Source: Paragordius varius
Taxonomy: Eukaryota > Animalia > Nematomorpha
NCBI GenBank assembly: GCA_964247055.1
Contig: OZ176051.1
Span: forward strand, 12,772,001 to 12,836,000
Reading direction: 5' to 3'
DNA: 64,000 nucleotides
Of this stretch, positions 21,301 through 64,000 are shown in pieces. Position numbers and translations under genes: made by a program. Numbering within the stretch: the first letter of the stretch is position 1; each line of letters opens with the position of its first letter. The notes beneath the pieces were generated by a model. The model worked only from the letters and a program-made list of their open reading frames with translations, did no database searches and was not told the DNA's origin.

Positions 21301-22250
21301 TAACTTTTTATATAAAGTGATATTTGATTTTCTGTCGATTTTCTTTAATTTTTAAAAAAATTGCAAACCTGTAATTTCAGAATTTTGATTAGGGGGATTA
21401 TAAAAAAATTAAATTCGGTTAGAACACTGCAATTATTCAAAATTCAAAATCTTCAGTGGTGGCAAATTTGTCGACTAGTGTTATTTACTAATAATTTTAA
21501 ATTAATTTTAGAAGCTCATTAATCAAATAATTGGTTATATTTATCAAAGCGCCATCCATTTTCGCTTTAAAACCTAAATTTTTTTAATTTAATTTTTGAT
21601 GACGTTATCGATTACAGATTCCTTTTTAAATTGATTTCGTTGATAAAGTGCTAAAATTTGGAAATATTTTTGTCTAAAGGCATTTTAACGCGTAAGCACC
21701 ACAACTGGATTAATAATAATTTAAAAAAGTTAACAAAAAATTGTAAATTAAATGAAATCTTACACCGATAACAAATACAAGCCATATTATTACGTCCAAA
21801 AAAAACTTACATTGAAATGATTGATTAAAATTGACTTTTTGTACCACAGCTCATATCCAAATTTAACCACAACTATCCAATTAAAAATGGCGTACCGAAT
21901 AAATTTTAATTAAAATTTTCTAAAATTCCACTAATATTGTATAAACCATACAAAATGATAATTGGAAAACATTAGAGTATAGTAGATGTTGATCTTATAT
22001 AATATTTAAAAAAGCTTTTGTTACTTTTTAGGAAAAAAACTTGGTAATTTTCTAAATTTATTTATACATTAATTCTGTTTTTTCAATGTTTAAATTTAAA
22101 TCTTGAATTATTTTATCATTGACATAATTCCATTAATAATTCTGTTCAAAAAAGCGTTGACTGATTTAAAATTGCGGAAAGTATGATAATAATAACAAAT
22201 TAATCATTGAACATTAAGAAACTACACATATATGAAATGAAACACTATAT

Positions 22251-22982: not shown

Positions 22983-24261
22983 TCTATATATTTATAAAAA
23001 TGGAAAATGCTGGCTTTGTGATCTGGTACAGGGAAACCGGTAGACCCAATTCAAATCCAAACTTCGAAAAAATATAATCATTAATGAATGCCCCGACAAT
23101 AGCTTCGCCCTTTTTTTAAAATAGGCCCCCAGTTCGGGCCCACCCCGTGTGAAAAACGGGTTTTTTTGAAAACAGAAGTCCACAAAAATCGTGTCTTTGA
23201 GACATTTTTCCGGAGAACGTGTTGGTCCATTCTATTTCAAATATGATTTTTGTTTACTTATTTTCGATTGCGCCGAACATAGTCGAGTGACATTTTTGAT
23301 TTAGGCCCTCTTTTTACCCGCTACCCCCGTAAAATTCCATTTTTTTCAAAAAAAAAACAAAGTCCACAAAAATAATTTTTTGATTGTATTTTTTTGCCCA
23401 AGGTATGAAACTGTAAAAATTCGAGAAGGTTTTTTTTGTATTACCTGTTAAAGGCAAAATTTTGGTCAAGCGTTTCTTTGATGATAGATGCTGAGTAAGG
23501 AGTATCTATCATATGTATAGCATGTTAAAAGATATATGGATATTATACATTATTTATGGTAATCTATATATTTATAAAAATGGAAAATGCTGGCTTTGTG
23601 ATCTGGTACAGGAAAAACGGTAGACCCATTAAAATCCAAACTTCGAAAAAATATAATCATTAATGAATGCTTCGACAATAGCTTCGCCCTTTTTTTAAAA
23701 TAGGCCCCCAGTTCGGGCCCACCTCGTGTGAAAAACGGGTTTTTTTGAAAACAGAAGTCCACAAAAATTGTGTCTTTGAGACATTTTTCCGGAGAACGTG
23801 TTGGTCCATTCTATTTCAAATATGATTATTGTTTACTTATTTTCGATTGCGCCGAACATAGTCGAGTGACATTTTTGATTTAGGCTCTCTTTTTACCCGC
23901 TCCCCCCGTAAAATGCCATTTTTTTCAAAAAACAAAGTCCACAAAAAATAATTTTTCAAATCGATTTTTCGCCTTAGGTATAAGACCGTAAAAATCTATA
24001 TGGATTCCACGTATTCCCTGTTGAAAGGCAAAAATTTTAGTCAGGCGTTTCTTTGATGATAGCTGCTGGGTAAGGAGCTACCCGCTAAAAACTGATTCCT
24101 CATAACTTTGTGATCTGTTTCCGGAAAACCGGTGAACCCAATCAAATTCAAATATCGAAAACATATGTGGATCATTTTATTGTCCCTTTTTTCAAATAAC
24201 CCCCCCTCCAGAAGTCCGAAGGACTTCCTCGTGCTGCGTAGCAGCACGAGATTTACGCTAG
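22983..24261 (+). mobile_element. non-autonomous Helitron, multimer (1279 bp)
   Basis: A|TCTATATATTTATAAAAATGG at 22983, internal TC end at 23563, hairpins at 24211-24227 and 24228-24250, and CTAG|T at 24258-24261. Confidence 0.9.
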
Positions 24262-25999: not shown

Positions 26000-28155
26000 A
26001 ATATCAAAAAAACGCATCGACTTAATTGATCAAACAAAAATAAGCATTAGATCCGACAAAGATCAATTCAATCTGCACTAACCTAAAGCAAGCTGCCAAA
26101 CTTAACCACAACTATTTTACTTACAGTAAAGTCATTTATCCACGCCAAAAAACAAATGTACAAAAGTCCCATGCACCCAAATGGAAAACTTCTAACCGAT
26201 AAAAAAGAAGTAATTTAGCTACTTTGAGAAAGCAAAACCTGTTCACAAAACAATCAAATAAAATTATTATCATTATACATATCCACCAATACTTAAGTAA
26301 GAAATCGGGGCACTGACGCAGTCATCGACCGGAAAAGCGGGATTTAATTGACATTCCTATAAAACTTATAATATCTTCAGTGAGGGATATTAAAAAGGGC
26401 GATCCCAAACTAACTATCGCAGAATACCATTAATTGACCAAACCTCAAAAGTTTTAAAATAATAAATGGTCAGCAACCTATGCCAATCCGGAAGTCTCAT
26501 ACAGGGAGGCTTCAGAGATAAAAAAGGATACCGAGACATGATCTCAAACATTAGATGGATATAATGGAACAAAAATTGTTAACTCCAAAATAAGCTACAC
26601 CTACGCTTCGTAGACATCTCTAATGCCTTTAGTACCGTTCAACATGACGTTCTTAGGAATGCTCTTAAAGAAAGAGGAGTGTCCGATCACTTAATCAAAC
26701 TAATCCATGTACGCCGAATCATTCCTATGAGTACCCCGCATTACAGGTTTACGTCAAGGCTGCATATTACCCCCATTTTGTTCAACAATTATCTGAAATG
26801 CTTCAGTAGGGATATAATTCTGCTTGGAATAAAAGTAGCAGTTTACACTCTCACGACCCTTAACTATGCTGACGACACGGTAATCTAAGCCGATATACAA
26901 ATAAGAGTCGAAAATAGTTTTTGAACTTTATAAATGTCTCCAAATTCATTCTAACACTAAATCTCAGCAAAACTAAAAAAAGACACCAACTTTCCTTATT
27001 TTTATGAGTCGCTTCGGATTAATGATAAATTTAAGTGCTTAAGTAAGACACATTCCTGGTAAACATTATCATCGAATTAAGTTCCAATTCACGAGACATA
27101 AAAAGAAAAACGTATAGCAAATGCACTTACCTTACATTTCAAACTATAGTATACCATTTGCACTTCAAGAGTGTCCTTAAACACTACAAGTTCCTTGAAC
27201 ATTTCAAGTTGGTCCTTGAACAGTTCAAGTTGGTCTTTGAACAGTTTAAGTTGGTCCTTAAACATTTCAAGTTGGTCCTTAAACACTTCAAGTTGGTCCT
27301 TGAACACTTCAAATTGGTCCTTTGACTTTTTTGTTTTGTTTTTAACTTTTATCAATCAATTCGTAAATAATGCATCTATTTTATTGTTTTTAACCTATTT
27401 TCTATTATTTAACATAAATTTTAAATAGAAATCAACTTTTTATCTTTCAGAAACCGTATATCTTTATTAATTTCCTAAAATAATTTTGGATATTTATAAG
27501 ATTTTAACACGAAATGAAAAAATATATAAGTTTTCTGGGTTATTAATTAAAATTTTTCATTAACATTTAAAAATCAATAATTTTGTTCAATTGAAAAAAA
27601 AAATAGTTTAAAACAAAAAAGTGGTTTTTCAATAAAAATATTTATTTTTAAATGAATAAATATAAAATAAATAAAGAAAATTAGGTAAATAAATATATAA
27701 ATAAAAAACTAAATTTAAAAATTATGGTTAAATCAAAATTCATAAATAAGGACCAACTCGAAGTGTTTAAGGACCAACTTGAATTGTTCAAGGATCTTGA
27801 ACTGCAAATGGATATAAGCATCTAAATCCAAAATCCGATAAATAAACTCCCTAATATTCCTTATCATGTTATACGGCTAGATGGAAGGAAGACAATATCG
27901 TAAGCAAATTAAACGCACAAACAACCCTTTGTGGTAAAGTAAAAATCGGTTATTTTGTACAAATAATTAGAGGATATTTGAAAAAATATATAATGTTGGG
28001 AAAAATAAATGGCAAGATAGGAAGAGGACGACGACGTATTCGTTGGATAGACGAAATTTTATCTACAAAATGTCATAGTAAAAATATCTTAAAAACCCAT
28101 GACAAAACACCGAGTGAAAGAATTTTCCTATAAATTCTCTAATGATTGATAATTG
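26000..28155 (+). mobile_element. decayed RTE-clade LINE fragment, interrupted by a MITE at 27154-27811
   Basis: Remnants KKGDP..NYR.IPLIDQTSKVLK, GLRQGCIL.PILFNNYL and NYADDTV, plus 3' IMLGKING..GRRRIRWIDEI followed by a caacaac tail. Confidence 0.8.
27154..27811. mobile_element. MITE with 17-bp TIR and subterminal 21-bp tandem repeats
   Basis: CCATTTGCACTTCAAGA / TCTTGAACTGCAAATGG ends. About 7 units of CCTTGAACA(T/G/C)TTCAAGTTGGT on the left and about 2.5 inverted on the right; absent from the paralogous site near 63570-63600. Confidence 0.8.
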
Positions 28156-28469
28156 ACTACAACAACATTATCAATTTATTAATAGATATTAAAACCAGTT
28201 TTTTCGAAAAATCACATTGGCAAAATAATAGCTAAACTATATTTAAATGAAAGATGAGCTAATGATAAAAAGTTATCTAAACTAAATATTTTTCATATAA
28301 ATGATATTTCTATACATTAATTTATTATTTTCCCCATGAGAAATCTCTTCTCTTGCGCCAATATATTTTCATGGGAGTTTTTGTCAAAATCTAATTAAAA
28401 TATCGAAAATCAGAACTCATTTTAAAACTTAATTCAGTGCTAATATTATAGACAAAATGTAAATATGGA

Positions 28470-28736
28470 TCATTTATGTAAAACCTCTAATTCAGCTTCA
28501 TAGAATGACAACATGTTTTCGTAACCGTGGTCAATTTTATTAGTTTGATGAATTGCTGCAGAGAGTTCAGGGCTATGACAAGATTGATAGTGCTCAATAC
28601 CATTGTCTACCGGCTCTAAACAAAAAAAATATATTTTTATAACCGTGTGAAAGAAAAAAAATAAAAACCCTTTATCCAATAATCCGATCTCTTGTGCAAA
28701 TTTGGCATCTCCCGTTTCTTGCGTTTATCCCCAGTC
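28470..28736 (-). CDS. candidate two-exon coding module, cassette copy 1 (TGDKRKKREMPNLHKRSDYWIK|EPVDNG...ELEVLHK)
   Basis: tgtag|G, G|gttt and tttag|AG junctions are conserved and phase-compatible in all three copies. No start exon could be joined. Confidence 0.35.
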
Positions 28737-29587
28737 CTACAGTATAAATTATGATATAACACTGCCGCACAAAATATATTATAACACATCTTAATATATA
28801 AATTTTGAAAAAGAATTATTAGGTTTATCATGGTGCTTTTGGTTTTGGACTTACGAATGTAATAAAGAATGTTAAAAACAATTTTGCATTGCTTGATAAA
28901 TGCCAAAATTCTCAAATATAATTCTTTAAATCTAAATGCTTTTTTTCCAGAAAACGTCACTAAAATATATCGTAAGCTATATATAAAAATCAAATATTTT
29001 TATTTGATTCATAATTTAAATGCGCCTCCAAGGGTCTTAAGTTTTTGGACACGTCCCAAGGAGGCAAATTTCTCTAAACTAAACTTAAATATTCTGATAA
29101 GCAACAATTAAAACCATGCATAAGCACTGTAATGTGCAGGTATTGATTAAGAATCGCAGTCGCCGATATTTAAACAGCTGTTAACACGCTTAAATAAAAT
29201 AGCACATGTTCTGTTTCTAAACTTGCTTAAAAAAGAGCCATTATCGGATAATGAGTGTTGAATTGATCATACAATTTGTTTGAGCAGATTAGAAAATGTG
29301 GAATTTTATTAAAAATGCATATTTTTTACTGTAATTAAAATTTTATTGATGTTAATACCGTAAAAATCAAAATTCTACAAACAACAAGTAAAAACTTAAA
29401 AACAGATATATTAAAAAAGATTGTGTTTTTTGAAACCTTGATTTTTCTTAATTATTGTTTGCTATACATATTGTTAAAACAATCAATTGCATATTTTGCT
29501 ATTTAAGAAAATCGGTCATTTTAATAAATGTTGTATTCTATTTTTACATTTTATGCATTAATTTTTACTGTTAAAATTTTAATGTAA

Positions 29588-30266
29588 TTACTCATCATCG
29601 TGTTCATAATCGTAGTCATAATATTCGTCTGGTTTTGGTAGAGTAGGGGGTTCGGTTGGATAGCCACATTCTTGGGGCTTGCCACCGTTTACTGGGATAA
29701 CTTTCATGCATTTCATATCAGGGCTATCGCAATTAACCCAATCTGTGTTATGTATGGAAAGGAAAAGGGGAATGGAATCATTGCCGGCACTCTTGGGTTT
29801 TCCGATAACTAGTTGGAAATATAGTGTAAATATATTATATGATAATGGCTAATTATATTACTTATGTTCGAATCCAAATTTTCTCTAATAACTTTTAGAT
29901 CGACACGGCATGTAAGTCCAATAATGGATAGTTTTGCATTCTTTTCTAAAGTTGAAAATATATGTTTTATACAGCAAAATTTAGAAAAATTTTACAACAA
30001 TTTACAAATAAAATTTTACTTTCTCTATATTTAACCAAAACATTCAACATTTAGATGGGAGGCTTAATTTTCAATGGTTTTACTAGAAAATTTAATTTTA
30101 CAATGAATAAAAATGAGAAATCCTGAATTTTACCCAAAATAATTGGATTCTCGGTAACATTGTTGGCATCCAATTCGATATGGCATTTATGAACAACGTG
30201 TGCTTTAGTATAATATAAGCCGAAACTGTTCAAACAAATTGAAATTATTGTTAAAAATTGATTCAT
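29588..30266 (-). CDS. secreted Cys-containing protein with acidic Tyr-rich tail, copy 1 (145 aa, intact); exons 30266-30134, 29945-29862, 29808-29588
   Basis: GT-AG introns, both phase 1, join MNQFLTIISICLNSFGLYYTKA..NPIIL|EKNAKLSIIGLTCRVDL..|IIGKPK..NCDSPDMKCMKVIPVNGGKPQECGYPTEPPTLPKPDEYYDYDYEHDDE*. Identical exon structure in the paralogs. Confidence 0.8.
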
Positions 30267-32018
30267 ATGTATTATAAAACTGATTTTTTTAATAATATTG
30301 TATAAAACAAAATTTTGTAATTATAATTTTTAAGTCCATATATAAGCAATAAATGAAAAATCAGTTAATATAACGCTGAGTAATATAGGCCCCATCTGCA
30401 AAAATATAAACGAATTGGAATCTTTCCAATTTTTCTTTTTATGTAAGCTTCTAAGAATTAAATTTTTTACAAAAAGAATATTATAGGAAATAAATGCAAT
30501 ATTAGAAATATTCACCTTCTGTGTAAATATATACATAGCTTTTCGATTCCTCCAAATTTCTTATATTAAACGAATACAGAATTTGCCTTTATAAAATGGA
30601 GAGATTTGATAATTCATGATGAATAGGTAGAATTTGATAATTAGATAATTTTAACCAATCATTACATAAAGTGTTATTCAAGCAAACAATTTTTTTTAAA
30701 AATAATTTTTATTATTTTTTAACTTTTTTCCTTAGCAATTAAGGGCCTAGGCATCAGAGGTGTCCACACAAATATCGGGCTACATTGATATTTTTTGGTT
30801 TTTTTTATCTATTAAGATACAAATTTTGGATGATTTATTTTTTAAATAATCGTGAAACTTTGATTGATATTCCACACTTTTTTAATTGTTCATTTTTTAC
30901 CCTTTTACGAACTAACAAAAGCTGGATATCCTTGGTAACACTATAAGCGACAAACTCATCATTACTTAATTTTGCATTTTAATCCATATCTAAAATTTTT
31001 CATAAACTGGGCCTATAAAGCCTATCTTTATAATTCTAATAATTTTTTGAATTGCTTGAATGTGTAGCATTTTTTGGAACTGAGATAATATGATTAAACA
31101 AAAATTTATTGAAAAACATATAAAATCCTGAGCTTAATTTCAAAATAGGAAAAATTCCTTGCGTGTAAACGATTAAAATTATTTACCTTAAAAACTGTAA
31201 TAATACTTAACATATCTTCTGTATTTTTCAGTTAAAAATTATTTATTTTTATTTTATTAAAATTAAGACCTAAATATGGTATAATCTAAATTTGCTTGTA
31301 TCATTAAATTTAATAAAATTCCTTATCATTAACTATAAATATTATTATTTTATTGAAAAACAAGTAGAATTGTTTTTTCTGTTAAATAACATGAATTATT
31401 ACTAATAATAAATATTTCTTAGGGACAAATAACAAAAGTTGATTGGAACCACAAAACATACTGATAAATTTTGATAAAAACGGATAAAGCCTGAACCCTC
31501 CTTATATAATAACAATATATCAAGGATTATTATTCTTAGCTTACCATATAGAACTCATAGCATATCCAATCAAGTAATAGGTGGCTTTATATGAAATCCA
31601 AATTTTACAAGCCCGTCTTCACCAAATGTTATAGTATGAGATACGTTTCGAGTTTTTTATTATTGAATAGTTTTAAAATATAGGTTACATAAAGACAACT
31701 ATTGCTCTATAGTAAGCACATTGACTTCTGATTGCGATGAAAGGCTAGAAATGTCATCTCCCTAGTACTATAAAAATGACGTTTTCCACTCAAAAATTTG
31801 TGGAGCGCTTTTTTACACATTCGAAAGTTACAATTAACAGTATTAGAATGTAAAAAAATCCAAACTCATGGATATTAATATTGATGATCCTCCTAACCTA
31901 TAATTAGTGGTCGAATCCTCCCTCCTATTATTGTAGTTGCGTGGATTTTAGAATGAGCAAAAACTATAAAAAAATTTCCATTAATTTAGTAAACCAAATA
32001 ACTATTTATGATTAATTA

Positions 32019-32940: not shown

Positions 32941-34234
32941 TATACAATAATTAAATATTCATTTTATTTAATATATTAATTAAAAATTTGTAGTTAAGAA
33001 GAAAATGAAAATATTGAGAATAATTTTAATATGTATTTATACAGTTTTTTGTGGAAGTACCTACAAAGATATACGAGTAAATGGATATATTGACTAGAAT
33101 TAACACTAAAATTTGTACAAAAAATTTATTTGCATGATTAACAAAATTCTAGGCTTTAAATAAAATAAGTTACTAAACAAACTAAGAGCCAAAGTATTAA
33201 AAATATAAAAGGGCATATGTATGGAGTGATAGATCCGGGTGGCTTGCAAAAGCTCTGCAGCTTAATGACCCCCAAGCGATCCTATAATTATGCCAGATAT
33301 GGCAAAGGTAACAATAAGTAATAGTAGAGCGTAGATAGTTACAAGCAAAATCCATTGACATGTCAAATTAACCAATTAGAATAAAGTTAGATAAATTCTA
33401 CTATTAAATCGAATAAAGAGATTAGTTAAATACAAATGGTCCAATCCTATAACAGTATATTTTACTAAAAGTGGCTACCCAATATCCATCTGAATTTCAA
33501 AATGCAGGGAAACCAATCAAAAAATAAATGATATCCACTAGGTATAAAATTTTTTTGTAAGAATCAACCGAAGAGAAAAACCCTAATAAGTATTCGAAAT
33601 AACGAAAACTAATAAAATAAATATAGCCTATCTGAAAGCCGAAGGTTTAAACTAGATGGAAGGACAAGGTGAATATCGTAAACAAATTAAACCCACAAAC
33701 AACCTTTTGTGGTAAAGTAAAAATCGGTTATTTTGTAGACATAAATAGAGGATATTTGAAAAAAGATATAATATTGGGAAAAATAAATGGCAACAGAGAA
33801 AAAGGACGAAGACGTATTCGTTAGATAGACGAAATTTTATGACTTTCCAAAATGTCGTTGCAAAAATATCTCAAAGCCCACGATAGAAAACCGAGTGGAA
33901 GAATTTTCCTATAAAATCTCTAATGATTGATAGACTACAACAACATATTAAAATTACCAATTTATTAATAGATATTGAAACATGTTTTTCCAAAAAAATC
34001 ACATTGGCAAAAAAATAGCTAAACTATATTTAAATAAAAGATGAGCTAATAATTATAAAAAGTTATCTAAACTAAATAAATTTCATACACATTGATTATT
34101 TTCCCCATGAATAATCTTTTCTCATGCGCCAATATATTTTCATGGGAGTTTTTGTAAAAATCTAAATAAAATATCGAAAATCAGAACACATTTAAAAACT
34201 TAATTCAGCGCTAATATTAGAGACAAAATGTAAA

Positions 34235-34514
34235 TATGTAGCATATATTTAAAACCTCTAATTCAGCTTCATAGAATGACAAAATGTTTTCGTAACCGCA
34301 GTCAATATTTTTAGTTTGATAAATTGCGGCAGAGAGTTCAGGGCTGTGACAAGATTCAAAGTACACAATACCACGTTCTATTTGCTCTAAACAAAAAATA
34401 TATTTTTATAACCGTGTGAAAGAAAAACAAACAATAAGAATAAACCCTTTATCCAATCATCCGATCTCTTGTGCACATTTGGGGTCTCACGTTTCTTGCG
34501 TTTATCATCAGTCC
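34235..34514 (-). CDS. candidate two-exon coding module, cassette copy 2 (TDDKRKKRETPNVHKRSDDWIK|EQIERG...)
   Basis: Same junctions and stop-free frame as copies 1 and 3. Confidence 0.3.
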
Positions 34515-35425
34515 TACAGTATAAAATATGATATAACACTGCGCACAAAATATATCATAGCACATTCTAGGAGTATATAAATTTTTAAAAAATAATATTT
34601 GGTTTATAATGGTGCTTTTGGTTTTGGGATTATCAATGTAACTAAGAAAGTTAAAAACAGTTTTCTATGGCTCCAGAAAAGAAAATAGAAAAATTTTCCC
34701 ACATTAATTCTTTGTGAAATCTAAATGCTTTTTTCAGAAAACGTCATTAAAATATATCGTAAGCTATATTAAAAAAGCAAAATAATATTTTAATTAGACT
34801 CATAATTAGAATGTGGAGTCCGAATGTCTTAAGTTTTTGGGCAAGTTTCCTTAAACTGCACTTAAATAATCTGATATAAAGCAACAAAATAACATAATTT
34901 TCCAAAATCATGCTATAAGCACTGTAATGTGCAGGTATTGATTAAGAGTCAGTTCCTTAATCATGCAATTGCCGATATTTAAACAGCTGTTGATACGCTT
35001 ATTTAAAACAGCACATGTTCTGTTCTAAACTTGCTTAAAAAAGAGCCATTCATCGGATAATGAGTGTTAAATTAATTAAACTTTTGAGCCAGGAAGTGTA
35101 TAATTTCAAGTTTTACAAATGCCTTTTTAAGGCAATTAATACTTTAATTGATGTTAATACCGTAAAAATCGAAATTATACAGACAACAAGTAAAAACTTA
35201 AAAACAGATATATAAAAAAGATTGTGTTTTTAAAACCTTGATTTTTCCTAATTATTGTTTGATTGAGATGCATATTGGTAAGACAATCAATTACATATTT
35301 TGCTATTTATGACGATAATTTATATGAGAAAAATTAAGGATAGAAAAAACTTACATTGGCCGTTTGAAAAAAAAAGTTGTTTTACATTTTATGCATAAAT
35401 TTTTACTGTAAATATTTAAATTTAA

Positions 35426-36079
35426 TTACTCATCATCGTCTTCATAGTCATAACTTTCATATTCGTCTGGTAGAGTAGGGGGTTGGGCTGGATAGCCACA
35501 TTCTTGGGGCTTGTCTCCATTTACTGGGATGACATCCATGCATTTCATATCAGGGCTGTCGCAATTAACCCTATCCGTGTTATGTATGGAAAGGGAAATG
35601 GAATCATTTATACCGGCACTCTTGGGTTTTCGGATAACTAGATGGAAATATAGTATAATATCATTATACATATAATATATGATTATGGTCAATTATATTA
35701 CTTATGTTTGAATCCAAATTCTCTCTAATAACTTTTAGATCGACACGGCATGTAAGTCCAATAATGGATAGTTTTGCATTCTTTTCTACAGTTTAAAAAT
35801 TTGTAATAATTAAAAAACAATTTTAAAATTTTACTTTCTATATTTAACCAAAACATTCAACATTTAGATGGGAGGCTTAATTTTCATCGGTTTTACAAGT
35901 AAATTTAATTTTACAATGAAAAAATGAAAAATGTTGAAATTTACCCAACATAATTAGATTCTTGGTAACATTGTTGCCATCCAGTTTGATATGACATCAA
36001 AAGCACTGTCTGCAAGTTTAGTATAATATAAGCCAAAACTGCTCAAACAAATTGCAAATATTGTTAAAATTTGATTCAT
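35426..36079 (-). pseudogene. secreted acidic-tail protein, copy 2; 1-nt deletion in exon 1
   Basis: Exon 1 (36079-35945) is 135 nt versus 136 nt in copy 3 (gct ttt ga tgt versus gct ttt aag tgt), giving a premature TAA. Exons 2 and 3 are intact (..PAQPPTLPDEYESYDYEDDDE*). Confidence 0.75.
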
Positions 36080-37084
36080 ATGTATAAAACTAAATATTTT
36101 AAAGTAATATTGTATAAAACAAAATTTTGTAATTATAATTTTTCAATAATTTCTAAGTCCATATATAAGCAATAAATGGAATTTCATGTTAATATAACGC
36201 TGAGTAATATAGGCTCCATCTGCAAAAATATAAGACGAATTGGATTTCCAATAATTTTTCTTTTTTTGTAAGCTTCTGAAAATTAAATTTTTTATAAAAA
36301 TGAATATTATAGTGAATAAATGCAAGATTAAAATTATGCACCTTCTGTGTAAATATATACATTTTTGGATTCCTCCAAATGTTTTATATTTAACGAGTAC
36401 GCCATTTGCCTGTATTAAATGGAGAGATTTGATAACTCATAGTGACTAGGTAGAGATATATTTTGATAAATAGATTATTTTAACAATCAATAAATAAATA
36501 TTCTTCTAGCAAACAATTTTTTTCAAAAATAACTTTTTCTTTTACTTTTACTTTTTTCTTTAGCAATTAAGAGTCTAGGCGCCAGAGGTATCTACACAAA
36601 TATCGGGCTGCATTATTTTTTGGTTTTTTAATCTATTAAGAGCCAAATTCGGGATATATTTTTCAAATAAACGTCAAATTTTGATCAATATTCACACTTT
36701 TTTATTTTTTCATTTTTTACCCTTTTACGAACAAAAAAAGCTGGATATCCTCGGTTTACACTATAAGCGACAAATACATTACTTAATGTCATATTTATGA
36801 TTTTTTAATAAACTGGGCCTAAAAAAGCCTATATATTTTTATTAATATTTTTTAGATGATTTGCTTGAATGTGTATGAGCATTTTTGGAACTGAGATAAT
36901 ATGATTAAACAAAAAGTTATTATAAAACATATACAATCCTGAGCTTTATTTCGAAATAGGGAAAATTCCTTATGTGTAAACGATTTCAGATACTTAGCCT
37001 GTACACTACATATATCTGTATTATTAGGCTAAAAATTATCTATTTTTCAATTTATTAAATTACGACCTAACTAAGATTTAATAT

Positions 37085-39887: not shown

Positions 39888-40950
39888 TTATAAATAAAAT
39901 TCGCAATCAGGCATCGATTTCTTTAATAGTGTTTTTAATCTGTTTGATTCAGGCTCATCGTTTAGTTTAAATTCTTTTTGTAATTTTGGGGAATCTTGTA
40001 TCCAAACATGTTTCAATGTATTTTTAAAATAATGCAAACAACTAGCTAAACCACGATATGTTATGTGGGGACAACCGCTGATATCTAATTGAGTAAGGTG
40101 GCTCACTATCGATGGCAATCGCGATAAATATATATCATTAACGTCAGGACATCCCCGCATATATAGTCCTTCAATGTAGTCAAGACCCTTTAAATTTGTA
40201 AGGGCATGGTAATTAAATTTTAAGCCTGATAAATCTAGGCATTGAATGCAACCATCTTTCATAACAAGGTCGCTATCACTTTTGTTTGCATCTAAGAATT
40301 GGTCGTAAAAAATGTTTGTCATATATGCAAAAGGTTGATATGACTGGTTAATTGAGGAGAAAGGCAAAAGGACCGATAAATTCTTAAGTGAAGCGACATC
40401 AGTATTAGGATCAATTTTTTGTACTAAAGATAATCCAGCTTTAAAGGTTTCCATGGGTGATTGCGATTGTTTAGCATGTAATATTGATGTGTACCAATAT
40501 TTTTGATTCCAAAATTTAACAGCACCTCCAAGTTTGAGGGTAAACACGGCTGCATTTAAATCGGCTCCGTATTGTTTTTGTTCTTTCTCCATTTTTCTAT
40601 ATTGAAAATATTTAAAATACTTAATATCTTTTCTTTCAAGTATATTTTTAACTTTGCCGATAATAGCATTATCATATTCCCTAAATGGTAAAGCACGAAA
40701 CATTCCCATTTTGGCACGAAACGTATCTAAAATATGTGCTTCAACTTTCCTAACCTAATAAAAAAATTTACCATTTTTCTGTCGGATCTGGATCGTATTT
40801 AAACGCAATATTTCTTACAATCAAATTTTTAAAAATTGGATGCGGATGGCATAAAGCATGGGTCATGTGTAAAAATAATCTTTCTTTGTCCGTGATGACA
40901 TATTGGGGAGTTTTGTTCTCAAAACTTAATTTTGTGATTAAACTACTCAT
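39888..40950 (-). CDS. DMAC2: DMAC2/ATP5SL-like mitochondrial complex I assembly factor (about 346 aa); intron 40750-40771 (22 nt)
   Basis: Motifs TLKLGGAVKF..W, LRR-like LDLSG/LYMRGCPDVND.YLSRL/LDISGCPHITYRGLA and terminal MPDCE parallel DMAC2. Exons 40950-40772 and 40749-39888 join in frame (..TEKW|KVEAH..). Confidence 0.8.
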
Positions 40951-45166: not shown

Positions 45167-48100
45167 TAAAACTTTCACGCATGTAAACACATGCTTTTAA
45201 TCGAGTGGGAAAGGTATGGTATACCTACCCATCTCTTATCGATCTTTTTACCAAAAACATTGATTTTTACCTTCTCCGAATATTAGAAATAGTTAGATCC
45301 TATTCCTTACATATCCATAACATATTTCCTATTCACATTCTTTCATTCGAAGGACATTCTGCTAATGTTGAAATCACGCAATCTCAGCATCCGCATCGCC
45401 ACATGGAATTTACGCGGATCCTACAAAAACCACAAACTAGATATTGTCGTTAACGAGATGGCTAAGCATAAAATTGACATACTAGGAATTTCATCACACA
45501 TCCCCTCTACCGGAACCTTAGAATTCGACAATCATATTTTGTATTATTCCGGCCACGACTCATCAAAATACAACGGTGTCGGCATAATAATGAACAAAAA
45601 ACTAGCTAACTTATCGGACATTTTTAATCCAATAAATGATCGTATTATCGCAATCCGCATAGAAACAACCCCTCAACCCATTACTATCCTCCAAATTTAC
45701 GCACCTACCTCCTCTTACAGCGATGACGACTGTGAAAAATTTTATAGCGATCTCGACTTGGCGATTTCCCAAATTTCAAAAAAGGATATCATATTTATCT
45801 TGGGCGATTTTAATTCAATCATCGGAACAGACAAAACACCTCCTATGACGGGCGGCATGGGCTTGGGCATAAAAAACGAGAGAGGAGACAGATTGATTGA
45901 ATTTCGTGCTAACCATCGTTTCTTCGTCGCAAACAGCTTTTTTAAACAGCCCAAACGACGTCTATACACATGGCGTTCCCCGTGTCAAAGATACCGTAAC
46001 CAGATTGACTTCATATTAGGTATGGTAAAATACAAAAGTTCATTTCAAAATGTCAAATGCCTACCAGGATCGGATTGCTACAGCGACCACAACCTATTGA
46101 TCGCCAAACTCCGAATTAAATTACAACTTCCTAAAACATCCAAACCCACAAGAACAAGATAAGATTATGATACAATCGACGACAAGTTTAGCACCGCTTT
46201 ATCAAATCGTTTCGATTGTCTTGATCATAATTCCGAAAACTATCAGGATATAAACTTCTTTTGGAACGATATATATACAATCTGCCGAGACACAGCCGAC
46301 GAATTCATTCGGCCTCTCAAACGCAATAAAAATAAAATAAAATTGTCAGCCAAAAGTCTCGAGATCGCAGAAAAGCGTAGAGACTCAAAAACCAAATGCA
46401 AATGGGATAAATACAAACAACTAAACAGTGAATTTCAGAAGAGTGCAAGAGAGGACACAAATAAGTATTATGACCAACTATGTGAAAAATTAGAAACAGA
46501 CGCCAAAAATAACCAAAACCTCTTTGCCCATGCAAACAATATTATTCCACACAAAAAAGTTTTTTATAAGGGACCTATGAGAAACGACAACAACTCAATC
46601 GTCACTGAAAAAGACGAAATTCGCAAACTATGGCACAAACATATAAACAAACTATACAATGTAAATAACCCCCCCAACTATTAACGAACTTACTAAACAA
46701 AAAGAACCACCTATTATGAAAGAAGAAGTGGAACTCGCCATAAAACACTCTAGCACCGGTAAATCAGAGGGCCACAAGGACATCCCTACTGAAATAATAA
46801 AATACATTCCAATCGATATACTCACCAAACTTTTTCAAATCATATTTGAGATGGAAAAATTCCTGAGGATTGGTGTACATCCATTATGATTCCGATTTTA
46901 AAAAAGGGTAACCCAGAACTGTGTGACAACTATCGCACCATAGCGCTCATAAACCAGGTGTCCAAAGTTTTTCTAAAAATAATACAATTTCGTCTAAATT
47001 CCATTCTTGACCCCGAAATATCCACGATTCAGGCTGGTTTTCGAAAAGGTAGAGGATGCCGAGATATGATATGTAACATGAGGTGGATAATCGAGAAACA
47101 CATCGAATTTAACAAAGAATTGCATATGTGCTTTGTCGATTTTTCCAAAGCATTTGATTCCATCCAGCACAATAAACTACGGAAGGCTCTAAAACAACTC
47201 GGAGTATCAACACATTTAATCAACATCATATTTTCAATTTATTCAAATTCCACGGCTATAGTATCCACACCATACGGTATATCTGACCCATGTAGGGTAC
47301 AAGTCGGCCTCCGTCAAGGATGCGTTTTATCACCAATTCTTTTTAACGCATACCTGGAGTGCATTATAAGAAATATCCCACAAACTTACGGCATCAACGT
47401 AGGTGGGAACTTACTTACATCCGTTCACTACGCGGATGATACAGTCTTATTCGCAGACAGTCTAGACACATTATCGCAAGCTTTGCAAGTGTTTACAACT
47501 GAATGCAATAAATTTGGATTAAATATCAATTTCAAAAAAACAAAAGTCATGCAAATAAATCCGGCTCAAACCAATTCAATAATCCTCAACGGCAACCAGA
47601 TCGAAACAGATAGCAGCTACACGTACTTAGGTAGCATTATTAATAATGAAAACAACTCTACGCCTGAAATAAAGCGAAGAATTGCTATTGCTAAAGCAGT
47701 AACTTTTAAATATAAATTTGGATGTCACATGACATTAAACTACAAACCAAAATCAGATTAATCAAAGCTACAGTTTTCCCCACATTCATGTATGGGGGGG
47801 AAAGCTGGACACTGAAAAAATATGATGAACGTCTAATAAATTCTTTCGAATTATGGGTTTGGAGAAAACTTCTTTAAACAAAATGGACAGACAAAGTTTC
47901 AAACACCACCATTCTAAATAAAATAAACCCAGAAATGTCACTCCTTGGCAGCTTAACACGGCAAAAACTCTCCTTCTTCGGGCACATCATGAGATCCAGC
48001 TCACTCGAAAAATCACTGATGCTGGGGAAAGTGAGTGGTGCCCGAAAAAGAGGGAGAAGACGAACTCGTTGGATGGATAACATCCTTAAAGAAACCAACC

Positions 48101-53053: not shown

Positions 53054-54244
53054 TTATAAATTATCCAATATATGGTTTGTGTCGTTTCTAAAACTTTTAA
53101 CTAATCCGCTCTTCAAATCAATCACGATAATTGGTTTCGTCATGCAACATTTTCCCTTATAAATGCGCCATTCTGACTTTGATAAATCAAATATACCAGT
53201 GGCTAAGGTGACTGACTTACCGACACAATTTGTATCATCGCATGTTCTATAAATGGGGTAATCCGTGTCAGTTGTATCACTCAATAATTCAAGTATATCA
53301 GTTGGAACGATAGGGCGTTTCAAAGATTGCACGTAACATTTTGTTCTGGTTTCTCGATGCTCAGAGCTGACAATGAATTCTGGTATTTCAAACACACCCG
53401 GGTAATGTTCATATTTATTAAAATGGGGATAAATGTGGTATCCTTTCCATTTTGTATCTTCACAATTGTCATTTATATGGTTGGCAATGTTAACATTCGG
53501 ATTCAGGGAAGCAGGTGCAACTTCAATATTATAATAGCTGCCTGAATCCAAAACATTCACACTAAAACCAACAGCTGATCCCATTGAAGTGTTATTCAAA
53601 ATACTTTTAACATGTGCCACACTTTGCGCGTTCCCAATCACATCTCGACACAGAAAAGCGCGTGGGATGGCATCAAGTTCGACACGGTTGCAGGAAAGTC
53701 CGTTCATTGTTATAATTAACGGATTTTTATCGTTCGCGCAATTAAATCCCATAGCGTTCCCAGGCAAATGTCCTGGGTAACAGTATGCAACAAATTTCTC
53801 AATATTCAAATTATTTTCCTTTGTTATATTAACATTTACGATATAAGCGGTATTTGCTATGGCATTGTGCATATCTTCATTATGTCCCAAAATATTGTGT
53901 TGGAAAGAAAAAATGTCTGTACAATCGTTAGCATGTTCCGGATTCAGACGAATGTAGTTGGTAATTTCAACCCTAAGACCAGCCAAAAATAGATAATAAA
54001 AGGGAATTTCAGTTGAATCCGAGTATCCTTGTAATTCTTGAATATAATTGGGATAAAATTTATTTGAAAAGTTTAAATAATTATTGTAAATTTGATAACC
54101 GATTGTTGTATTATAAAAAGGAATATATACGGAATGTAACCAATCATAGTTTTTATAAAATCTATTTATTTCTTCTTTAAATCTTTTACCAATATTATAT
54201 CCAACTTGGTAATAATTACCTCCGACTTTATAAAATTCAGTCAT
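53054..54244 (-). CDS. peptidase C45 / Ntn-hydrolase (IAT / Tan-like), 396 aa, intronless
   Basis: Uninterrupted 1191-nt ORF with N-terminal GxxYQVGYNIGKRF, putative autocleavage nucleophile D-C108-T, GHNED and YPGHLPGNAMGFN motifs typical of the AAT/C45 family. Confidence 0.85.
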   Translation of the reverse strand: MTEFYKVGGNYYQVGYNIGKRFKEEINRFYKNYDWLHSVYIPFYNTTIGYQIYNNYLNFSNKFYPNYIQELQGYSDSTEIPFYYLFLAGLRVEITNYIRLNPEHANDCTDIFSFQHNILGHNEDMHNAIANTAYIVNVNITKENNLNIEKFVAYCYPGHLPGNAMGFNCANDKNPLIITMNGLSCNRVELDAIPRAFLCRDVIGNAQSVAHVKSILNNTSMGSAVGFSVNVLDSGSYYNIEVAPASLNPNVNIANHINDNCEDTKWKGYHIYPHFNKYEHYPGVFEIPEFIVSSEHRETRTKCYVQSLKRPIVPTDILELLSDTTDTDYPIYRTCDDTNCVGKSVTLATGIFDLSKSEWRIYKGKCCMTKPIIVIDLKSGLVKSFRNDTNHILDNL

Positions 54245-59078: not shown

Positions 59079-61115
59079 TATAGTGACGTAAAGGTTAAAT
59101 ACGAAGCAATTATCTAAATGATCTTAAGAGTAAAAAGAGAAGCTATTTAAAAGTAAGTAGTTATAGTTTAGTCACAGGCGTGCTTAAAGACAAAAGTTAT
59201 GTGATAAATAATTTTTCATGTGTTGAGCTAAGTATATAAACGTCAATTATCCTTTCAAAAAAACACTCAAAAATATATCCATAATCAAAACTTCCTAAGA
59301 TTATGTGGTTTTCAGATATCCTTATTAATATTTTAAAACAAAAAAAAGTAAATAGTAAATATTATGTATTTAGGGTTGTATGATGAAAATTAAAGTAAAT
59401 GGAGTAAATTTATAATTATGAGGACCTTAAACTATTGGATTTGGATCATCATTTTAGGAAAATCAAATATTTATCAATTGATAATTATTATAAATTGGTT
59501 ATTTGGCTTACTAAATTAATGGAAATTTTATGATAGTTTTTGCTCATTTTAAAATCCACGCAACTAAAATAGGGAGGATTCGACCCCTCATTATAGGTTA
59601 AGGAGGATCATCAAAATTAAAATCAGGTTTGGATTTTTAAAGCAGTTTTACATTCTAATCCTGTTAATTGTAATTTTCGAATGTTTAAAAAAGCGCTTCA
59701 CAAATTTTTAAGTGAAAAACATTTTTATAGTAACAACATACTATGGAGATAACATTTCTAGTCTTTCATCGCAATCAGAAGCCAATGTGCTTACTATAGA
59801 GCAATAGTTGTCTTTATGTAAATACTCTAAAACTATTCAGTAATAATAAACTCGAAAGGGCTTGTAAAATTTCCTTGATATGTTGTTAATTTAAGGATGG
59901 TTCAGGCTTCATCTTTTCACAAAATTAATCAATATGGGTTGTGTTGTGGTTCCAACTAAGTTGTGTTATTTGTATCAGGATTTTACGAAATACTAATTGG
60001 TAAAAACTTATGTTATTTAACCTGAAAAAAATTATATTTATTCAATAAAATAATAATATATAGGGTTAATGTTATGGAATTTCGTAAATTTCAATGATAC
60101 AGGCAAATTTAGATGTAGTATTTATACCATATTTAGGTCTTAATTTTAATAAAATGAAAAATGGATAGTGTTTAACCGAATTAAATATGTAAACTTAAAC
60201 AGTAGTTTTCAGGCTAAATATTTATATCGTTTACACGCAATAAAATTCTATTTGGAAATTAAGCTCAGGAATTCATATGTTTTCGAATAACTTTTTGTTT
60301 AATCATATTATCTCAGTTCCAAAAAATGCTCATACACATTCAACCAATTCATCTAAAAAATATTAGGATTATAAAAATATATAGGCTTTATAAGCCCAGT
60401 TTATTAGAAATTAATGTGGCTTAAAATGTAAAAGGAATTTTTCGTTTATAGTGTCAACCAGGTATGTCCCACACGATTTGTTCAGTGCAAAAAAGTGCTC
60501 TAAAAATCAAAAAATAAAAAAGTGTGGAAATTAAACAAAATTTAAATTGGGCTCTTAATAGATTAAAAAACCAAAAAATAATGCAGCCCGATATTTGTGT
60601 GGAAACCTCTGGTGACTAGACTCTTAATTGCTAAAGAAAAAAGTAAAAGTAAAAGAAAAAGTTATTTTTGAAAAAAATTGTTTGCTAGAAGAACCATTTA
60701 TTTATTGATTGTTAAAATAATCTATTTATCAAAATATATCTCTACCTAGTCACTATGAGTTATCAAATCTCTCCATTTAATACAGGAAAATGGCGTACTC
60801 GTTAAATATAAAACATTTGGAGAAATCCAAAAATTTATATATTTACACAGAAGGTGCATAATTTTAATCTTGCATTTATTCACTATAATATTCTTTTTTA
60901 TAAAAAATTTAATTTTCAGAAGTTTACAAAAAAAGAAAAATTATTGGAAATCCGATTCGTCTTATATTTTTGCAGATGGGGCCTATATTACTCAGCGTTA
61001 TATTAACATGATATTCCATTTATTGCCTATATATGGACTTAGAAGTTATTGAAAAATTATAATTACAAAATTTTGTTTTATACAATATTACTTTTAAATA
61101 TTTAGTTTTATACAT

Positions 61116-61811
61116 ATGAATCAAATTTTAACAATATTTGCAATTTGTTTGAGCAGTTTTGGCTTATATTATACTAAACTTGCAGACAGTGCTTTTAAGT
61201 GTGAAATCAAACTGGATGGCAACAATGTTACCAAGAATCCAATTATTTTGGGTAAAATTCAAAATTTTTCTTTTTTTATCATTGTAAAATTAAATTTACT
61301 TGTAAAACCAATGAAAATTAAGCCATCCTGTTGGATGTGTTGGTTAAATATAGAGAAATTAAAATTTTATTTGTAAATTGTTTTCTAAATTTTGCTGTAT
61401 AAAACATATATTTTAAACTTTAGAAAAGAATGCAAAACTATCCATTATTGGATTTACATGCCGTGCCGATCTAAAAGTTATTAGAGAGAATTTGCATTCA
61501 AACATAAGTAATATAATTAACCATAATCATATATACATATATATATTTATAATATATATGATATTACACTGTATTTCCAACTAGTTATCCGAAAACCCAA
61601 GGGTGCCGGTAAAAATAATTCCATTTCCCTTTCCCTTTCCATACATAACACGGATAGGGTTAATTGCAATAGCCCTGATATGAAATGCATGAAAGTCATC
61701 CCAGTAAACGGTGGCAAGCCCCAAGAATGTGGCTATCCAACCCAACCCCCTACTCTACCAAAACCCGAAGACGAATATGATGAGTACGATTATGAATACG
61801 ATGATGAGTAA
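61116..61811 (+). CDS. secreted Cys-containing protein with acidic Tyr-rich tail, copy 3 (148 aa, intact); exons 61116-61251, 61424-61507, 61585-61811
   Basis: MNQILTIFAICLSSFGLYYTKLADSAFKCEIKLDGNNVTKNPIIL|EKNAKLSIIGFTCRADLKVIRENLHSNI|IIRKPK..NCNSPDMKCMKVIPVNGGKPQECGYPTQPPTLPKPEDEYDEYDYEYDDE*. GT-AG junctions are in phase. Confidence 0.8.
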
Positions 61812-62694
61812 TTAAATTAAAATTTTAACAGTAAAAATTTATGCATAATATGTAAAAATATAAAACAACATTACGACCAATTTTCCTAAATTATTGTATT
61901 AAATAACAAAATATGTAATTGATTGCTTCACCAATATGCATGCATCTCAATCAAACAATAATTAAATAAGTTTTAAAAAAACACAATCTTTTTTAATATA
62001 TCTGTTTTTAAGTTTTTACTTATTGTCTGTATAATTTCGATTTTTACGGTATTTAAATCAATTAAATTTTAATACAGTATAAAATAAGCATTTTTAAAAG
62101 TTAAAATTCCTCATTCCTAATCTGCTCAAACAAATTTAAATTCAAGGCTAATTATCCGATAATGGCTCGTTTTTAAACAAGTTTAGAATAGAACATGTGC
62201 TATTTTATTTAAGCGTGTCAACAGCTGTTTAAATATCGGCAATTGCATGATTAAAGAACTGATTCTTAATCAATACCTGCACATTACAGTGCTTATGCAT
62301 GGTTCTAATTGTTGCTTATCAGAATTTTTAAGTTTAGTTCAAAGAAACTTGCCTCCATGGGACGTGTCCAAAAACTTAAAACTTTCGGAGAATCCGCATT
62401 TGAATTTAATAAAAATATTTGTTTTTATATATAGCTTACGATATATTTTAGTGACGTTTTCTGGAAAAAAAAGCATTTATATTTCACAAAGAATTATATT
62501 AAATGTGAAAAAACTTTGCTATTTTCTTATCTGGAGCAATAGAAAACTGTTTTCAACTTTCTTTATTACATTCGTAAGTCCAAAACCAAAAGTACCATGA
62601 TAAACCTAATAATTCTTTTCTAAAATTTATATATTTCATAAGATGTGTTATAATATATATTGTGCGAAGTGTTATATCATACTTTATACTGTAG

Positions 62695-62986
62695 GACTGG
62701 GGATAAACGCAAGAAACGTAGGGCCCCAAATTTGCACAAGAGATCGGATTATTGGATAAAGGGTTTATTCTTATTTTTTATTTTTCTTTCACACGGCTAT
62801 AAAAATATCTTTTTTTTAGAGCCGGTAGAAAATGGTATTGGGTACTATCAATCTTGTCACAGCCCTGGACTCTCTGCCGCAATTTATCAAACTAAAAAAA
62901 TTGACCGCGGTTACGAAAACATTTTGTCATTCTATGCAGCTGAATTAGAGGTTTTAAATATGCTCCATATTTACATTAGGTTTTGA
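62695..62986 (+). CDS. candidate two-exon coding module, cassette copy 3 (exons 62695-62762, 62820-)
   Basis: TGDKRKKRRAPNLHKRSDYWIK|EPVENGIGYYQSCHSPG..; junction phases match, upstream exon unresolved. Confidence 0.35.
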
Positions 62987-63249
62987 AATTAGTTCTGATT
63001 TTCGATATTTTATTTAGATTTTGACAAAAACTCCCATGAAAATATATTGGCGCAAGAGAAAAGATCTATTACGGAGAAAAGAGTGAATCAATCTATAGAA
63101 ATATCATCTTATAAAATTTATTTAATTTAGATATTTTTTATCATTATTAGCTCATCTTTTAATTAAATATAGTTTAGCTTTTTTTTGCCAATGTGATTTT
63201 TTTTGGAAAAACTGGTTTTAATATCTATTAATAAATTGATAATTTTGAT

Positions 63250-64000
63250 ATGTTGTTGTAGTCAATTATCAATCAGTAGAGAATTTATAGGAAAATTCTT
63301 TCACTCGGTGTTTATGGGTTTCTTGATTTTTACTATGACATTTTGTAGATTAAATTTCGTCTATCCAACAAATACATCGTAGTCCTCTTGCTTAACATTA
63401 TATACGTTTTCAAATATCCTCTAATTATGTGTCAAAAATAACTGATTGTTATTTTACCACAAAGCGTGTACGTTTATTTTGTTTACGATATTGTCTTAAC
63501 CTTGTCCTTCCATCTAGCCGTACCTGATAAGGAATATTAGGGATTTTATTTATCGGATTTCGGATTCTAAAAGTATATCATAAGATTTCCATAGTTTAAA
63601 ATGTGTGGTTAAATGCATTTGCTATAGGCCTTTTTATGTAGGAACTTAATTTGTTGATAATGTTTACCAGGAATGTGTACCTTAATCACTAATTTTTTTG
63701 TTATTAATCCGAAGCGAGATATATGTGTAATAAAAGTTGATGCATAATTTAATTTTGAGATTTCAATGTTAGATAGTATTTGCAGACATTTATAAAAGTT
63801 TAGAGCCTGTTTTCGAGGCTTGTTTGTATGTCGGCTTAGATTACCGTTTTCTTAACATAGTTAAGAGTCTTGAAAGTGTGAACCCCTACTTTTATTTCAG
63901 GCAGAATTATATCCCTACTGAAGAATTCCAGATAAATGTTGAACAATATGGGGGATACAATGCAGCCTAACGTAAACCTGTTTTCATTGGGCTCCAGGCG
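63250..64000 (-). mobile_element. decayed RTE LINE fragment at the cassette edge
   Basis: Reverse-complement homolog of 26740-28155 (RT remnant and 3' end). Confidence 0.75.

What the first reader, a model, noticed from the sequence alone, without database searches (positions are those of the whole stretch)
61116..61811. Expanding family of orphan secreted proteins with a Cys core, Pro linker and Asp/Glu/Tyr (sulfotyrosine-type) tail
Seen: three paralogs (29588-30266, 35426-36079, 61116-61811) share a 3-exon structure that the ORF track misses. Each has a hydrophobic N-terminus, five mature Cys, a PTxPPTLPKP linker and a tail (DEYYDYDYEHDDE / DEYESYDYEDDDE / EDEYDEYDYEYDDE). Divergence concentrates just after the signal peptide and in the tail, often as in-frame indels, while the core is conserved; one copy is frameshifted (birth-and-death pattern). 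Known: Tyr in acidic context is the tyrosylprotein sulfotransferase substrate, and such tails mediate thrombin-exosite binding in hirudin and arthropod anticoagulants and chemokine binding in evasins. Inference: a lineage-specific host-interaction effector. From memory, NPIILEKNAKLSIIG loosely resembles the GM2-activator/ML fold, and KC..GxKxQ.C..PKP plus acidic tail loosely resembles hirudin; neither resemblance is verified.
Basis: partly seen in the sequence, partly recalled or inferred. Interest (0 to 1): 0.75.

Follow-up and report, generated by a model that had tools for sequence, protein, structure and literature searches.

The report
Small orphan secreted acidic-tyrosine-tail gene family
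Three neighbouring copies (two intact, one broken) of a small three-exon gene in a very AT-rich, probably horsehair-worm genome encode a likely secreted protein ending in a strongly acidic, tyrosine-rich tail that looks like a target for tyrosine sulfation; it is real and has no known relatives, but it is a tiny, partly decaying family and its function is untested.

Summary
The sequence-level observation holds. Copies C (61116-61811, +), A (29588-30266, -) and B (35426-36079, -) share a GT-AG three-exon model of about 148 codons. Each has a hydrophobic N-terminus, five Cys after it, a Pro/Thr hinge and a 13-14-residue Asp/Glu/Tyr tail. B has a 1-nt deletion in exon 1.

The family is not expanding. 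The 110.6-Mb genome holds five copies; the other two, 1.4 Mb away, share several disabling lesions, so only A and C are intact.

The copies lie in 4-5 kb segmental duplications. Exons are no more alike than introns (A vs C dN/dS 0.81). Coding is still supported:
- Exonic indels are mostly multiples of three (8/11 vs 12/51 non-coding, p=0.003).
- Exon GC is 30-43% against 17-19% in introns.
- An open frame survives 38 neutral substitutions in only 14% of simulations.

Pfam, PDB, the word search, ESM Atlas and a profile search of 1.84 billion proteins found no true relative, but close kin of this species are missing from those libraries. The ML-fold and hirudin resemblances are not supported.

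A tyrosylprotein sulfotransferase gene is present, and all tail Tyr fit its known preferences.

Best reading: a fast-evolving secreted protein whose sulfated tail docks on a cationic partner, target unknown.

The parts
61116..61251 (+). Copy C exon 1 (136 nt, ends in phase 1): start codon, hydrophobic signal-like segment, first Cys after the signal segment, N-V-T sequon
   Evidence: donor GT at 61252-61253
61424..61507 (+). Copy C exon 2 (84 nt, phase 1 to phase 1): second Cys after the signal segment
   Evidence: acceptor AG at 61422-61423, donor GT at 61508-61509
61585..61811 (+). Copy C exon 3 (227 nt including TAA): three Cys, Pro/Thr hinge, 14-residue Asp/Glu/Tyr tail (4 Tyr, net charge -10)
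   Evidence: GC 43% against 17-19% in the introns
60863..61115 (+). 5' flank shared by all five copies in the genome (likely promoter, with a TATA-like run about 80 nt before the ATG)
   Evidence: no more conserved than the introns, so promoter function is inferred
29588..30266 (-). Copy A, intact: e1 30134-30266, e2 29862-29945, e3 29588-29808; differs from C by three 3-nt indels and 38 substitutions in exons
35426..36079 (-). Copy B, broken: e1 35945-36079 with a 1-nt deletion between 35996 and 35997, e2 35702-35785, e3 35426-35637 with in-frame 6-nt and 9-nt deletions
59482..63566 (.). Segmental-duplication unit around copy C. It matches 27825-32018 (unit A, inverted) and 33652-37081 (unit B, inverted). 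The B and C 5' parts are 97-99% identical (gene-conversion-like tract 60645-61237).

Best explanation
A lineage-restricted family of small genes (about 148 codons, three exons) encodes a secreted protein in three parts. First comes a roughly 100-residue domain, probably beta-rich and N-glycosylated, with five Cys. Then a short Pro/Thr hinge. Last a 13-14-residue polyanionic tail with four Tyr.

Proposed mechanism:
- The N-terminal hydrophobic segment sends the protein into the secretory pathway.
- In the Golgi the genome's own tyrosylprotein sulfotransferase sulfates the tail tyrosines.
- The flexible, highly negative tail then docks on a positively charged patch of a partner protein, as sulfated tails do in known exosite binders, while the Cys domain gives specificity.

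The family evolves fast, by local segmental duplication, gene conversion and loss. Two genes (A and C) are intact, one (B) is freshly frameshifted, and two distant copies are old pseudogenes.

Shown: gene structure, copy number, lesions, indel and composition evidence for coding, absence of detectable relatives, presence of TPST. Inferred: secretion, sulfation, binding role. Unknown: the partner, and whether it belongs to the host.
For: - Splice model with GT-AG introns and consistent phases in A, B and C.
- Exon GC is 30/31/43% against 17-19% in introns and 19-21% in flanks.
- Exonic indels are multiples of 3 in 8/11 cases against 12/51 non-coding, Fisher p=0.003. The three frame-breaking ones are confined to B and D/E.
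- Under the local neutral substitution spectrum only 14% of simulations keep the frame open after 38 substitutions.
- The exon-3 core has dN/dS 0.38-0.48 against the distant copies (p=0.014 for A-D).
- The N-terminus has a 16-residue hydrophobic core (Kyte-Doolittle mean 1.5-1.8) followed by small residues.
- Every tail Tyr has 4-7 acidic residues within +-5 and at most one basic residue. All but one follow Asp or Glu directly.
- The tail pattern occurs only twice in 110 Mb.
- A TPST orthologue lies at C10:967248-974212, with E about 1e-22 to human TPST1/2 structures.
- Sulfated acidic peptides that bind cationic exosites are well documented (PMC12434495).
Against: - No RNA or protein evidence of expression was available.
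- A vs C dN/dS is 0.81, not different from 1 (p=0.67), and exons diverge like introns, so current constraint is unproven.
- Three of five copies are dead.
- The number of Cys after the signal segment is odd.
- No signal-peptide or sulfation predictor was available.
- Exon 3 folded alone gives pLDDT 48.
Confidence: 0.45

Rival explanations
1. The whole family is a relic. A once-functional gene was copied by segmental duplication and all copies now drift neutrally. A and C are still open only because they are young.
For: - dN/dS is 0.81-0.98 among the window copies, and exon divergence equals intron divergence.
- Flanks are as similar as the gene.
- B, D and E are visibly broken.
Against: Several things would have to hold by chance at once in A and C. 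The frame stays open (P about 0.14). All three A/C exonic indels are in frame, against a 24% in-frame rate in non-coding DNA. All four splice dinucleotides and the ATG are kept. The joint chance is roughly 1e-3.
Confidence: 0.2
2. It is a structural or adhesive polyanion rather than a specific binder. The acidic Tyr tail would bind calcium or the many secreted poly-arginine/cationic proteins other agents noted in this genome (charge-driven condensation). Alternatively it would supply Tyr for dityrosine cross-links in cuticle, egg string or cyst wall.
For: - The tail carries net charge -8 to -10 with 4 Tyr.
- Unchecked earlier notes describe several orphan secreted polycationic families in this genome, one 567 kb from this window.
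- Ecdysozoan cuticles use tyrosine cross-links (general knowledge).
Against: - The tail is only 13-14 residues on a folded-looking Cys domain.
- There are just two intact genes.
- There are no repeats or low-complexity body as in matrix proteins.
- No pairing with the cationic families was tested.
Confidence: 0.15
3. It is a hirudin- or evasin-type effector of a blood feeder: a thrombin exosite or chemokine binder, as the first reader suggested by analogy.
For: The acidic Tyr tail after a Cys-containing domain resembles the general layout of hirudin and sulfated tick or insect anticoagulants (PMC12434495).
Against: - No Pfam or PDB match at E up to 10.
- Five Cys spread over about 100 residues, not the compact six-Cys hirudin head.
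- The mitochondrial contig has the long perfect palindromes described for Nematomorpha (PMC6649704), which parasitise arthropods that lack thrombin and chemokines.
Confidence: 0.03

Closest known systems
Sulfotyrosine-bearing acidic tails of secreted exosite binders (hirudin C-tail; madanin, hyalomin, tsetse and other salivary thrombin inhibitors; sulfated evasins)
   Same: - Secretory-pathway protein.
- Flexible terminal stretch of Asp/Glu with several Tyr in the context TPST prefers.
- A Pro-rich spacer before it.
- Fast, lineage-specific evolution.
   Different: - No sequence similarity in the body of the protein.
- Larger five-Cys domain.
- Four clustered Tyr at the very C-terminus.
- The organism is probably an arthropod parasitoid, not a blood feeder.
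- Sulfation and any target are unproven.
ML (MD-2-related lipid-recognition) / GM2-activator beta-sandwich proteins
   Same: - Similar size (about 125-130 residues after the signal segment).
- Signal peptide and a few Cys.
- Alternating hydrophobic/polar stretches that suggest beta strands.
   Different: - No HMM match for any exon.
- Odd Cys number.
- ML proteins have no acidic Tyr tail.
- The fold could not be tested.
Clustered, fast-evolving secreted effector families with conserved 5' end and divergent secreted part (e.g. gall-midge SSGPs, conotoxin superfamilies)
   Same: - Local duplication.
- Conserved flank and signal segment.
- Excess divergence right after the signal segment.
- Pseudogenised members.
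   Different: - Only five copies.
- The excess divergence is not skewed to non-synonymous sites (dN about equal to dS).
- No expression data.

Membership tests
Hirudin family | Compact N-terminal head with six Cys in three disulfides, recognisable by the family HMM | tested here: not met
   No Pfam match for any exon at E up to 10 and no PDB match at E up to 10. There are five Cys spread over about 100 residues.
Hirudin family | Acidic C-terminal tail with sulfated Tyr that binds thrombin exosite I | tested here: inconclusive
   An acidic Tyr tail is present. Sulfation and thrombin binding cannot be tested here, and the probable host range (arthropods) lacks thrombin.
ML / GM2-activator domain | Match to the ML-domain profile | tested here: not met
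   hmmscan of each exon against Pfam-A at E up to 10 gave nothing.
ML / GM2-activator domain | Beta-sandwich fold with a lipid cavity | not testable with these tools
Exon 3 folded alone gave pLDDT 48.
TPST substrates (tyrosine O-sulfation sites) | Tyr with Asp/Glu next to it, several acidic and few basic residues within +-5, no nearby Cys or N-glycan | tested here: met
   All four tail Tyr in A and in C have 4-7 acidic and 0-1 basic residues within +-5. Seven of the eight have Asp or Glu at -1. This is a rule-of-thumb count, not Sulfinator.
TPST substrates (tyrosine O-sulfation sites) | Protein passes through the secretory pathway of an organism that has TPST | tested here: met
   The TPST orthologue at C10 matches human TPST1/2 at E about 1e-22. 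The signal-like N-terminus was judged by hydropathy only.
TPST substrates (tyrosine O-sulfation sites) | Sulfate actually present on the Tyr | not testable with these tools
   Needs mass spectrometry of the native protein.
Orphan (taxonomically restricted) gene | No homologue outside the lineage | tested here: inconclusive
   There was no true hit among 1.84 billion representatives; the three weak hits are repeat artefacts. The word search, Atlas and PDB also gave none. But even a conserved enzyme of this window finds at best 35% identity, and exact window proteins are absent from the collection. Sister species are therefore not sampled.

The most novel reading that the evidence does not exclude
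A horsehair-worm effector that reuses the blood-feeders' trick. A sulfotyrosine tail would dock on cationic exosites of insect haemolymph clip-domain proteases (the melanisation or clotting cascade). That would let the worm grow unharmed in the host body cavity, a convergent, non-homologous 'hirudin' aimed at arthropod immunity.
Probability: 0.08. Interest if true: 0.75.

Novelty: new variant of a known kind. Interest (0 to 1): 0.35.

Why it matters
If expressed and sulfated, this would be an unrelated protein scaffold carrying one of the densest sulfotyrosine-type tails known. It would come from a phylum whose molecular dealings with its insect hosts are almost unknown. That would give a concrete candidate to test in host-parasite or extracellular-matrix biology.

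As it stands it is one more small orphan secreted gene family in a genome that has many, with two working copies.

Tried and rejected
- **More family members.** DNA, single-protein and profile searches of the whole assembly, a search with the 5' flank, and a tail-pattern search found only the five loci plus one unrelated pattern hit.
- **Transposon origin.** The flanks are unique to the copies, apart from a roughly 250-nt dispersed repeat inserted downstream. Rejected.
- **ML, hirudin or any known family.** Pfam at E up to 10, a PDB profile search and the ESM Atlas found nothing.
- **Big profile search.** It gave three hits at E 6e-5 to 4e-4. They proved to be multi-stretch matches to a tandem coiled-coil repeat protein and a repeat-derived junk ORF. 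Rejected as relatives.
- **Fold of exon 3 alone.** pLDDT was 48, so no fold search was run.
- **Joined 148-residue model.** It was not built, searched or folded.
- **Organism identity from proteins.** The tan-like ORF gave only 35% and 31% hits, to a chiton and a moth. The LRR ORF gave none. Exact look-ups were blank.
- **Acidic Tyr tails on this genome's serpins** (an earlier first-reader note). None was seen in the 22 serpin C-termini I read.
- **Positive selection.** There is no dN/dS above 1 with support.

Full report
**What is there**

The window is very AT-rich (28% GC) animal DNA. It is C2:12772001-12836000 of a 110.6-Mb, 44-contig assembly.

At 61116-61811 (+) a three-exon reading works:
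- Exon 1 is 61116-61251, exon 2 is 61424-61507 and exon 3 is 61585-61811.
- Both introns are GT-AG.
- The phases join into about 148 codons.

The same model holds on the minus strand for copy A (30134-30266, 29862-29945, 29588-29808). It also holds for copy B (35945-36079, 35702-35785, 35426-35637).

- a hydrophobic N-terminus;
- two Cys in the exon 1/2 part and three in exon 3;
- N-x-S/T sequons in exons 1 and 3;
- a Pro/Thr hinge;
- the three quoted Asp/Glu/Tyr tails.

B has a 1-nt deletion in exon 1, between 35996 and 35997. It leads to a stop about 14 codons on. I describe the break only and made no mended version.

**How big is the family**

I searched the whole assembly with exon-3 DNA, the exon-3 and exon-1 peptides, a five-sequence profile at E up to 10, and the 5' flank. 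Every search gave the same five loci.

The two outside the window are D at C2:14206989-14207648 and E at C2:14194417-14195079. They are nearly identical to each other and share several lesions:
- The intron-1 GT and AG are gone.
- Exon 2 is 10 nt short.
- A TAA precedes the acidic tail.
- There is a 1-nt deletion near the end.

The family therefore has two intact genes, one fresh pseudogene and two old ones. That is birth and death, but not an expansion.

**Duplication history**

The copies sit in segmental duplications of 4-5 kb. A and B are 5.8 kb apart in tandem, and C is inverted 24 kb away.

Flank identity (85-93%) equals that of the gene. A 97-99% identical tract between B and C covers the promoter region and exon 1, which looks like gene conversion.

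Homology with D/E is limited to 60863-62304.

The flanks are not a transposon. Apart from a roughly 250-nt dispersed repeat downstream, they occur only at these loci.

**Is it coding and constrained**

Among the window copies there is no sign of purifying selection:
- A vs C gives dN 0.091 and dS 0.112, a ratio of 0.81 (p=0.67 against 1).
- Intron divergence is 0.10-0.13.

The 'conserved core' is thus mainly recency. Several independent signals still support a coding gene kept open:
- Exon GC is 30/31/43% against 17-19% in introns.
- Eleven exonic indel events include eight multiples of three, against 12 of 51 in introns and flanks (p=0.003). All three frame-breakers are in the dead copies.
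- With the local neutral substitution spectrum, only 14% of simulations keep the frame and the ATG after the 38 A-C substitutions.
- All splice dinucleotides are kept in A and C.
- Over the longer A/C-to-D distance the exon-3 core has dN/dS 0.38-0.48 (p=0.014 for A-D).

The stretch just after the signal segment is unusually divergent between A and C (14/69 vs 24/357, p=0.001). This holds for synonymous and non-synonymous sites alike, so a conversion mosaic explains it as well as selection does.

**Relatives**

- No exon matches Pfam, even at E=10.
- The word-indexed search of 5.8 billion proteins found no candidate. I used the 94-residue open frame around exon 3 so that full-length kin fell inside the length limit.
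- The ESM Atlas gave nothing usable.
- A PDB profile search gave nothing at E up to 10.
- The profile search of 1.84 billion representatives gave three weak hits. These are multi-stretch matches to a tandem coiled-coil repeat protein and a repeat-derived ORF, not homologues.

There is a caveat. The species and its close kin are not in these libraries. Exact ORFs from this window are absent. A conserved tan-like hydrolase finds at best 35% identity, and another 273-residue ORF finds nothing. 'Orphan' therefore means 'no relative detectable with present sampling'.

Exon 3 folded alone gave pLDDT 48, so the fold question, ML-like or otherwise, stays open.

**Organism**

Earlier agents called this genome a probable horsehair worm. 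I tested that partly.

The 15.7-kb mitochondrial contig (C44) carries many perfect palindromes, with arms up to 208 nt and no loop. This is the peculiarity published for Nematomorpha mitochondria (PMC6649704). I did not show that the palindromes lie inside coding genes.

Published hairworm assemblies are 200-300 Mb (10.1101/2024.06.11.598342) and this one is 110 Mb, so it is another species.

Hairworms grow in the body cavity of arthropods.

**The tail**

- In C the last 14 residues carry net charge -10 with four Tyr. In A the last 13 carry -8 with four Tyr.
- Every tail Tyr has 4-7 acidic and at most one basic residue within five positions. Seven of the eight follow Asp or Glu directly.
- These are the known preferences of tyrosylprotein sulfotransferase. 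That is established knowledge applied by counting, not a predictor.
- The genome encodes a TPST orthologue (C10:967248-974212), whose first exon matches human TPST1/2 structures at E about 1e-22.
- The motif [DE][DE]Y[DE][DE]Y[DE] occurs only twice in the whole genome.
- The core differs strongly in charge between the two intact genes: +9 in C and 0 in A.
- An earlier first-reader note says some serpins of this genome have similar tails. I saw none in the 22 serpin C-termini I read.

**Verdict**

This is a real, probably secreted, fast-evolving and very small gene family without detectable relatives.

The most likely mode of action is a sulfated polyanionic tail, tethered by a Pro/Thr hinge to a small Cys domain, that docks on a cationic partner. 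Known sulfated exosite binders work this way (PMC12434495). The partner, the expression and the sulfation itself are all untested.

Rivals are a drifting relic family, a structural or adhesive polyanion, and (unlikely) a true anticoagulant.

Interest is moderate to low until RNA or protein data exist.

Noticed in passing
window 18779-21304 and 23046-23969: There is a tandem array of a 513-nt unit (4-5 copies, 85-99% alike). Inverted copies lie about 2-4 kb away, giving a satellite-like block with a palindromic arrangement.
   Followed up: no
window 45365-47761 (+): A non-LTR retrotransposon remnant. ORFs match the endonuclease/exonuclease/phosphatase and reverse-transcriptase domains and are split by frame breaks.
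   Followed up: partly
window 53054-54244 (-): An intronless 396-residue ORF of the AAT/peptidase C45 family. Its best hit is 35% to a chiton 'beta-alanyl-dopamine/carcinine hydrolase-like' protein and 31% to a moth protein, so it is a tan-like hydrolase.
   Followed up: partly
window 39888-40709 (-): An intact 273-residue ORF with only a faint leucine-rich-repeat signal. It has no relative in the word-indexed search.
   Followed up: partly
window about 62400-62650: A roughly 250-nt dispersed repeat with hundreds of candidate copies across the genome (456 first-look candidates, about 70% identity). It sits inside the duplicated unit downstream of each gene copy and is probably a SINE or MITE.
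   Followed up: no
window 35999-36499 vs 60696-61196: There are 501-nt inverted repeats, 98% identical and head to head across 24 kb (the B and C 5' regions). They are a substrate for inversion or gene conversion of the interval, which holds the LRR ORF, the retrotransposon and the tan-like gene.
   Followed up: no
L030 (G000:C44:1-10000, mitochondrial contig): There are perfect palindromes with arms of 208, 138, 136, 131 and 92 nt and 0-5 nt between the arms. A tandem run of about 72-nt hairpin units lies at 6752-7451. A nuclear copy of a mitochondrial NADH-dehydrogenase gene lies at C2:8694586-8696490.
   Followed up: partly
L022 1480-2502 (-) = G000:C10 about 974.0-975.1 kb: The first exon of the TPST orthologue carries a roughly 270-residue Asn-rich low-complexity N-terminal extension before the conserved sulfotransferase motif.
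   Followed up: no
G000:C7 2.73-3.03 Mb and other contigs: The genome has a large serpin complement (70 exon-level matches). It includes a tandem cluster on C7 and two genes 430-500 kb past this window's end on C2.
   Followed up: partly
window 5958-6359 (-): A 133-residue ORF whose sequence looks by eye like a retroviral-type integrase core fragment. I did not test it.
   Followed up: no
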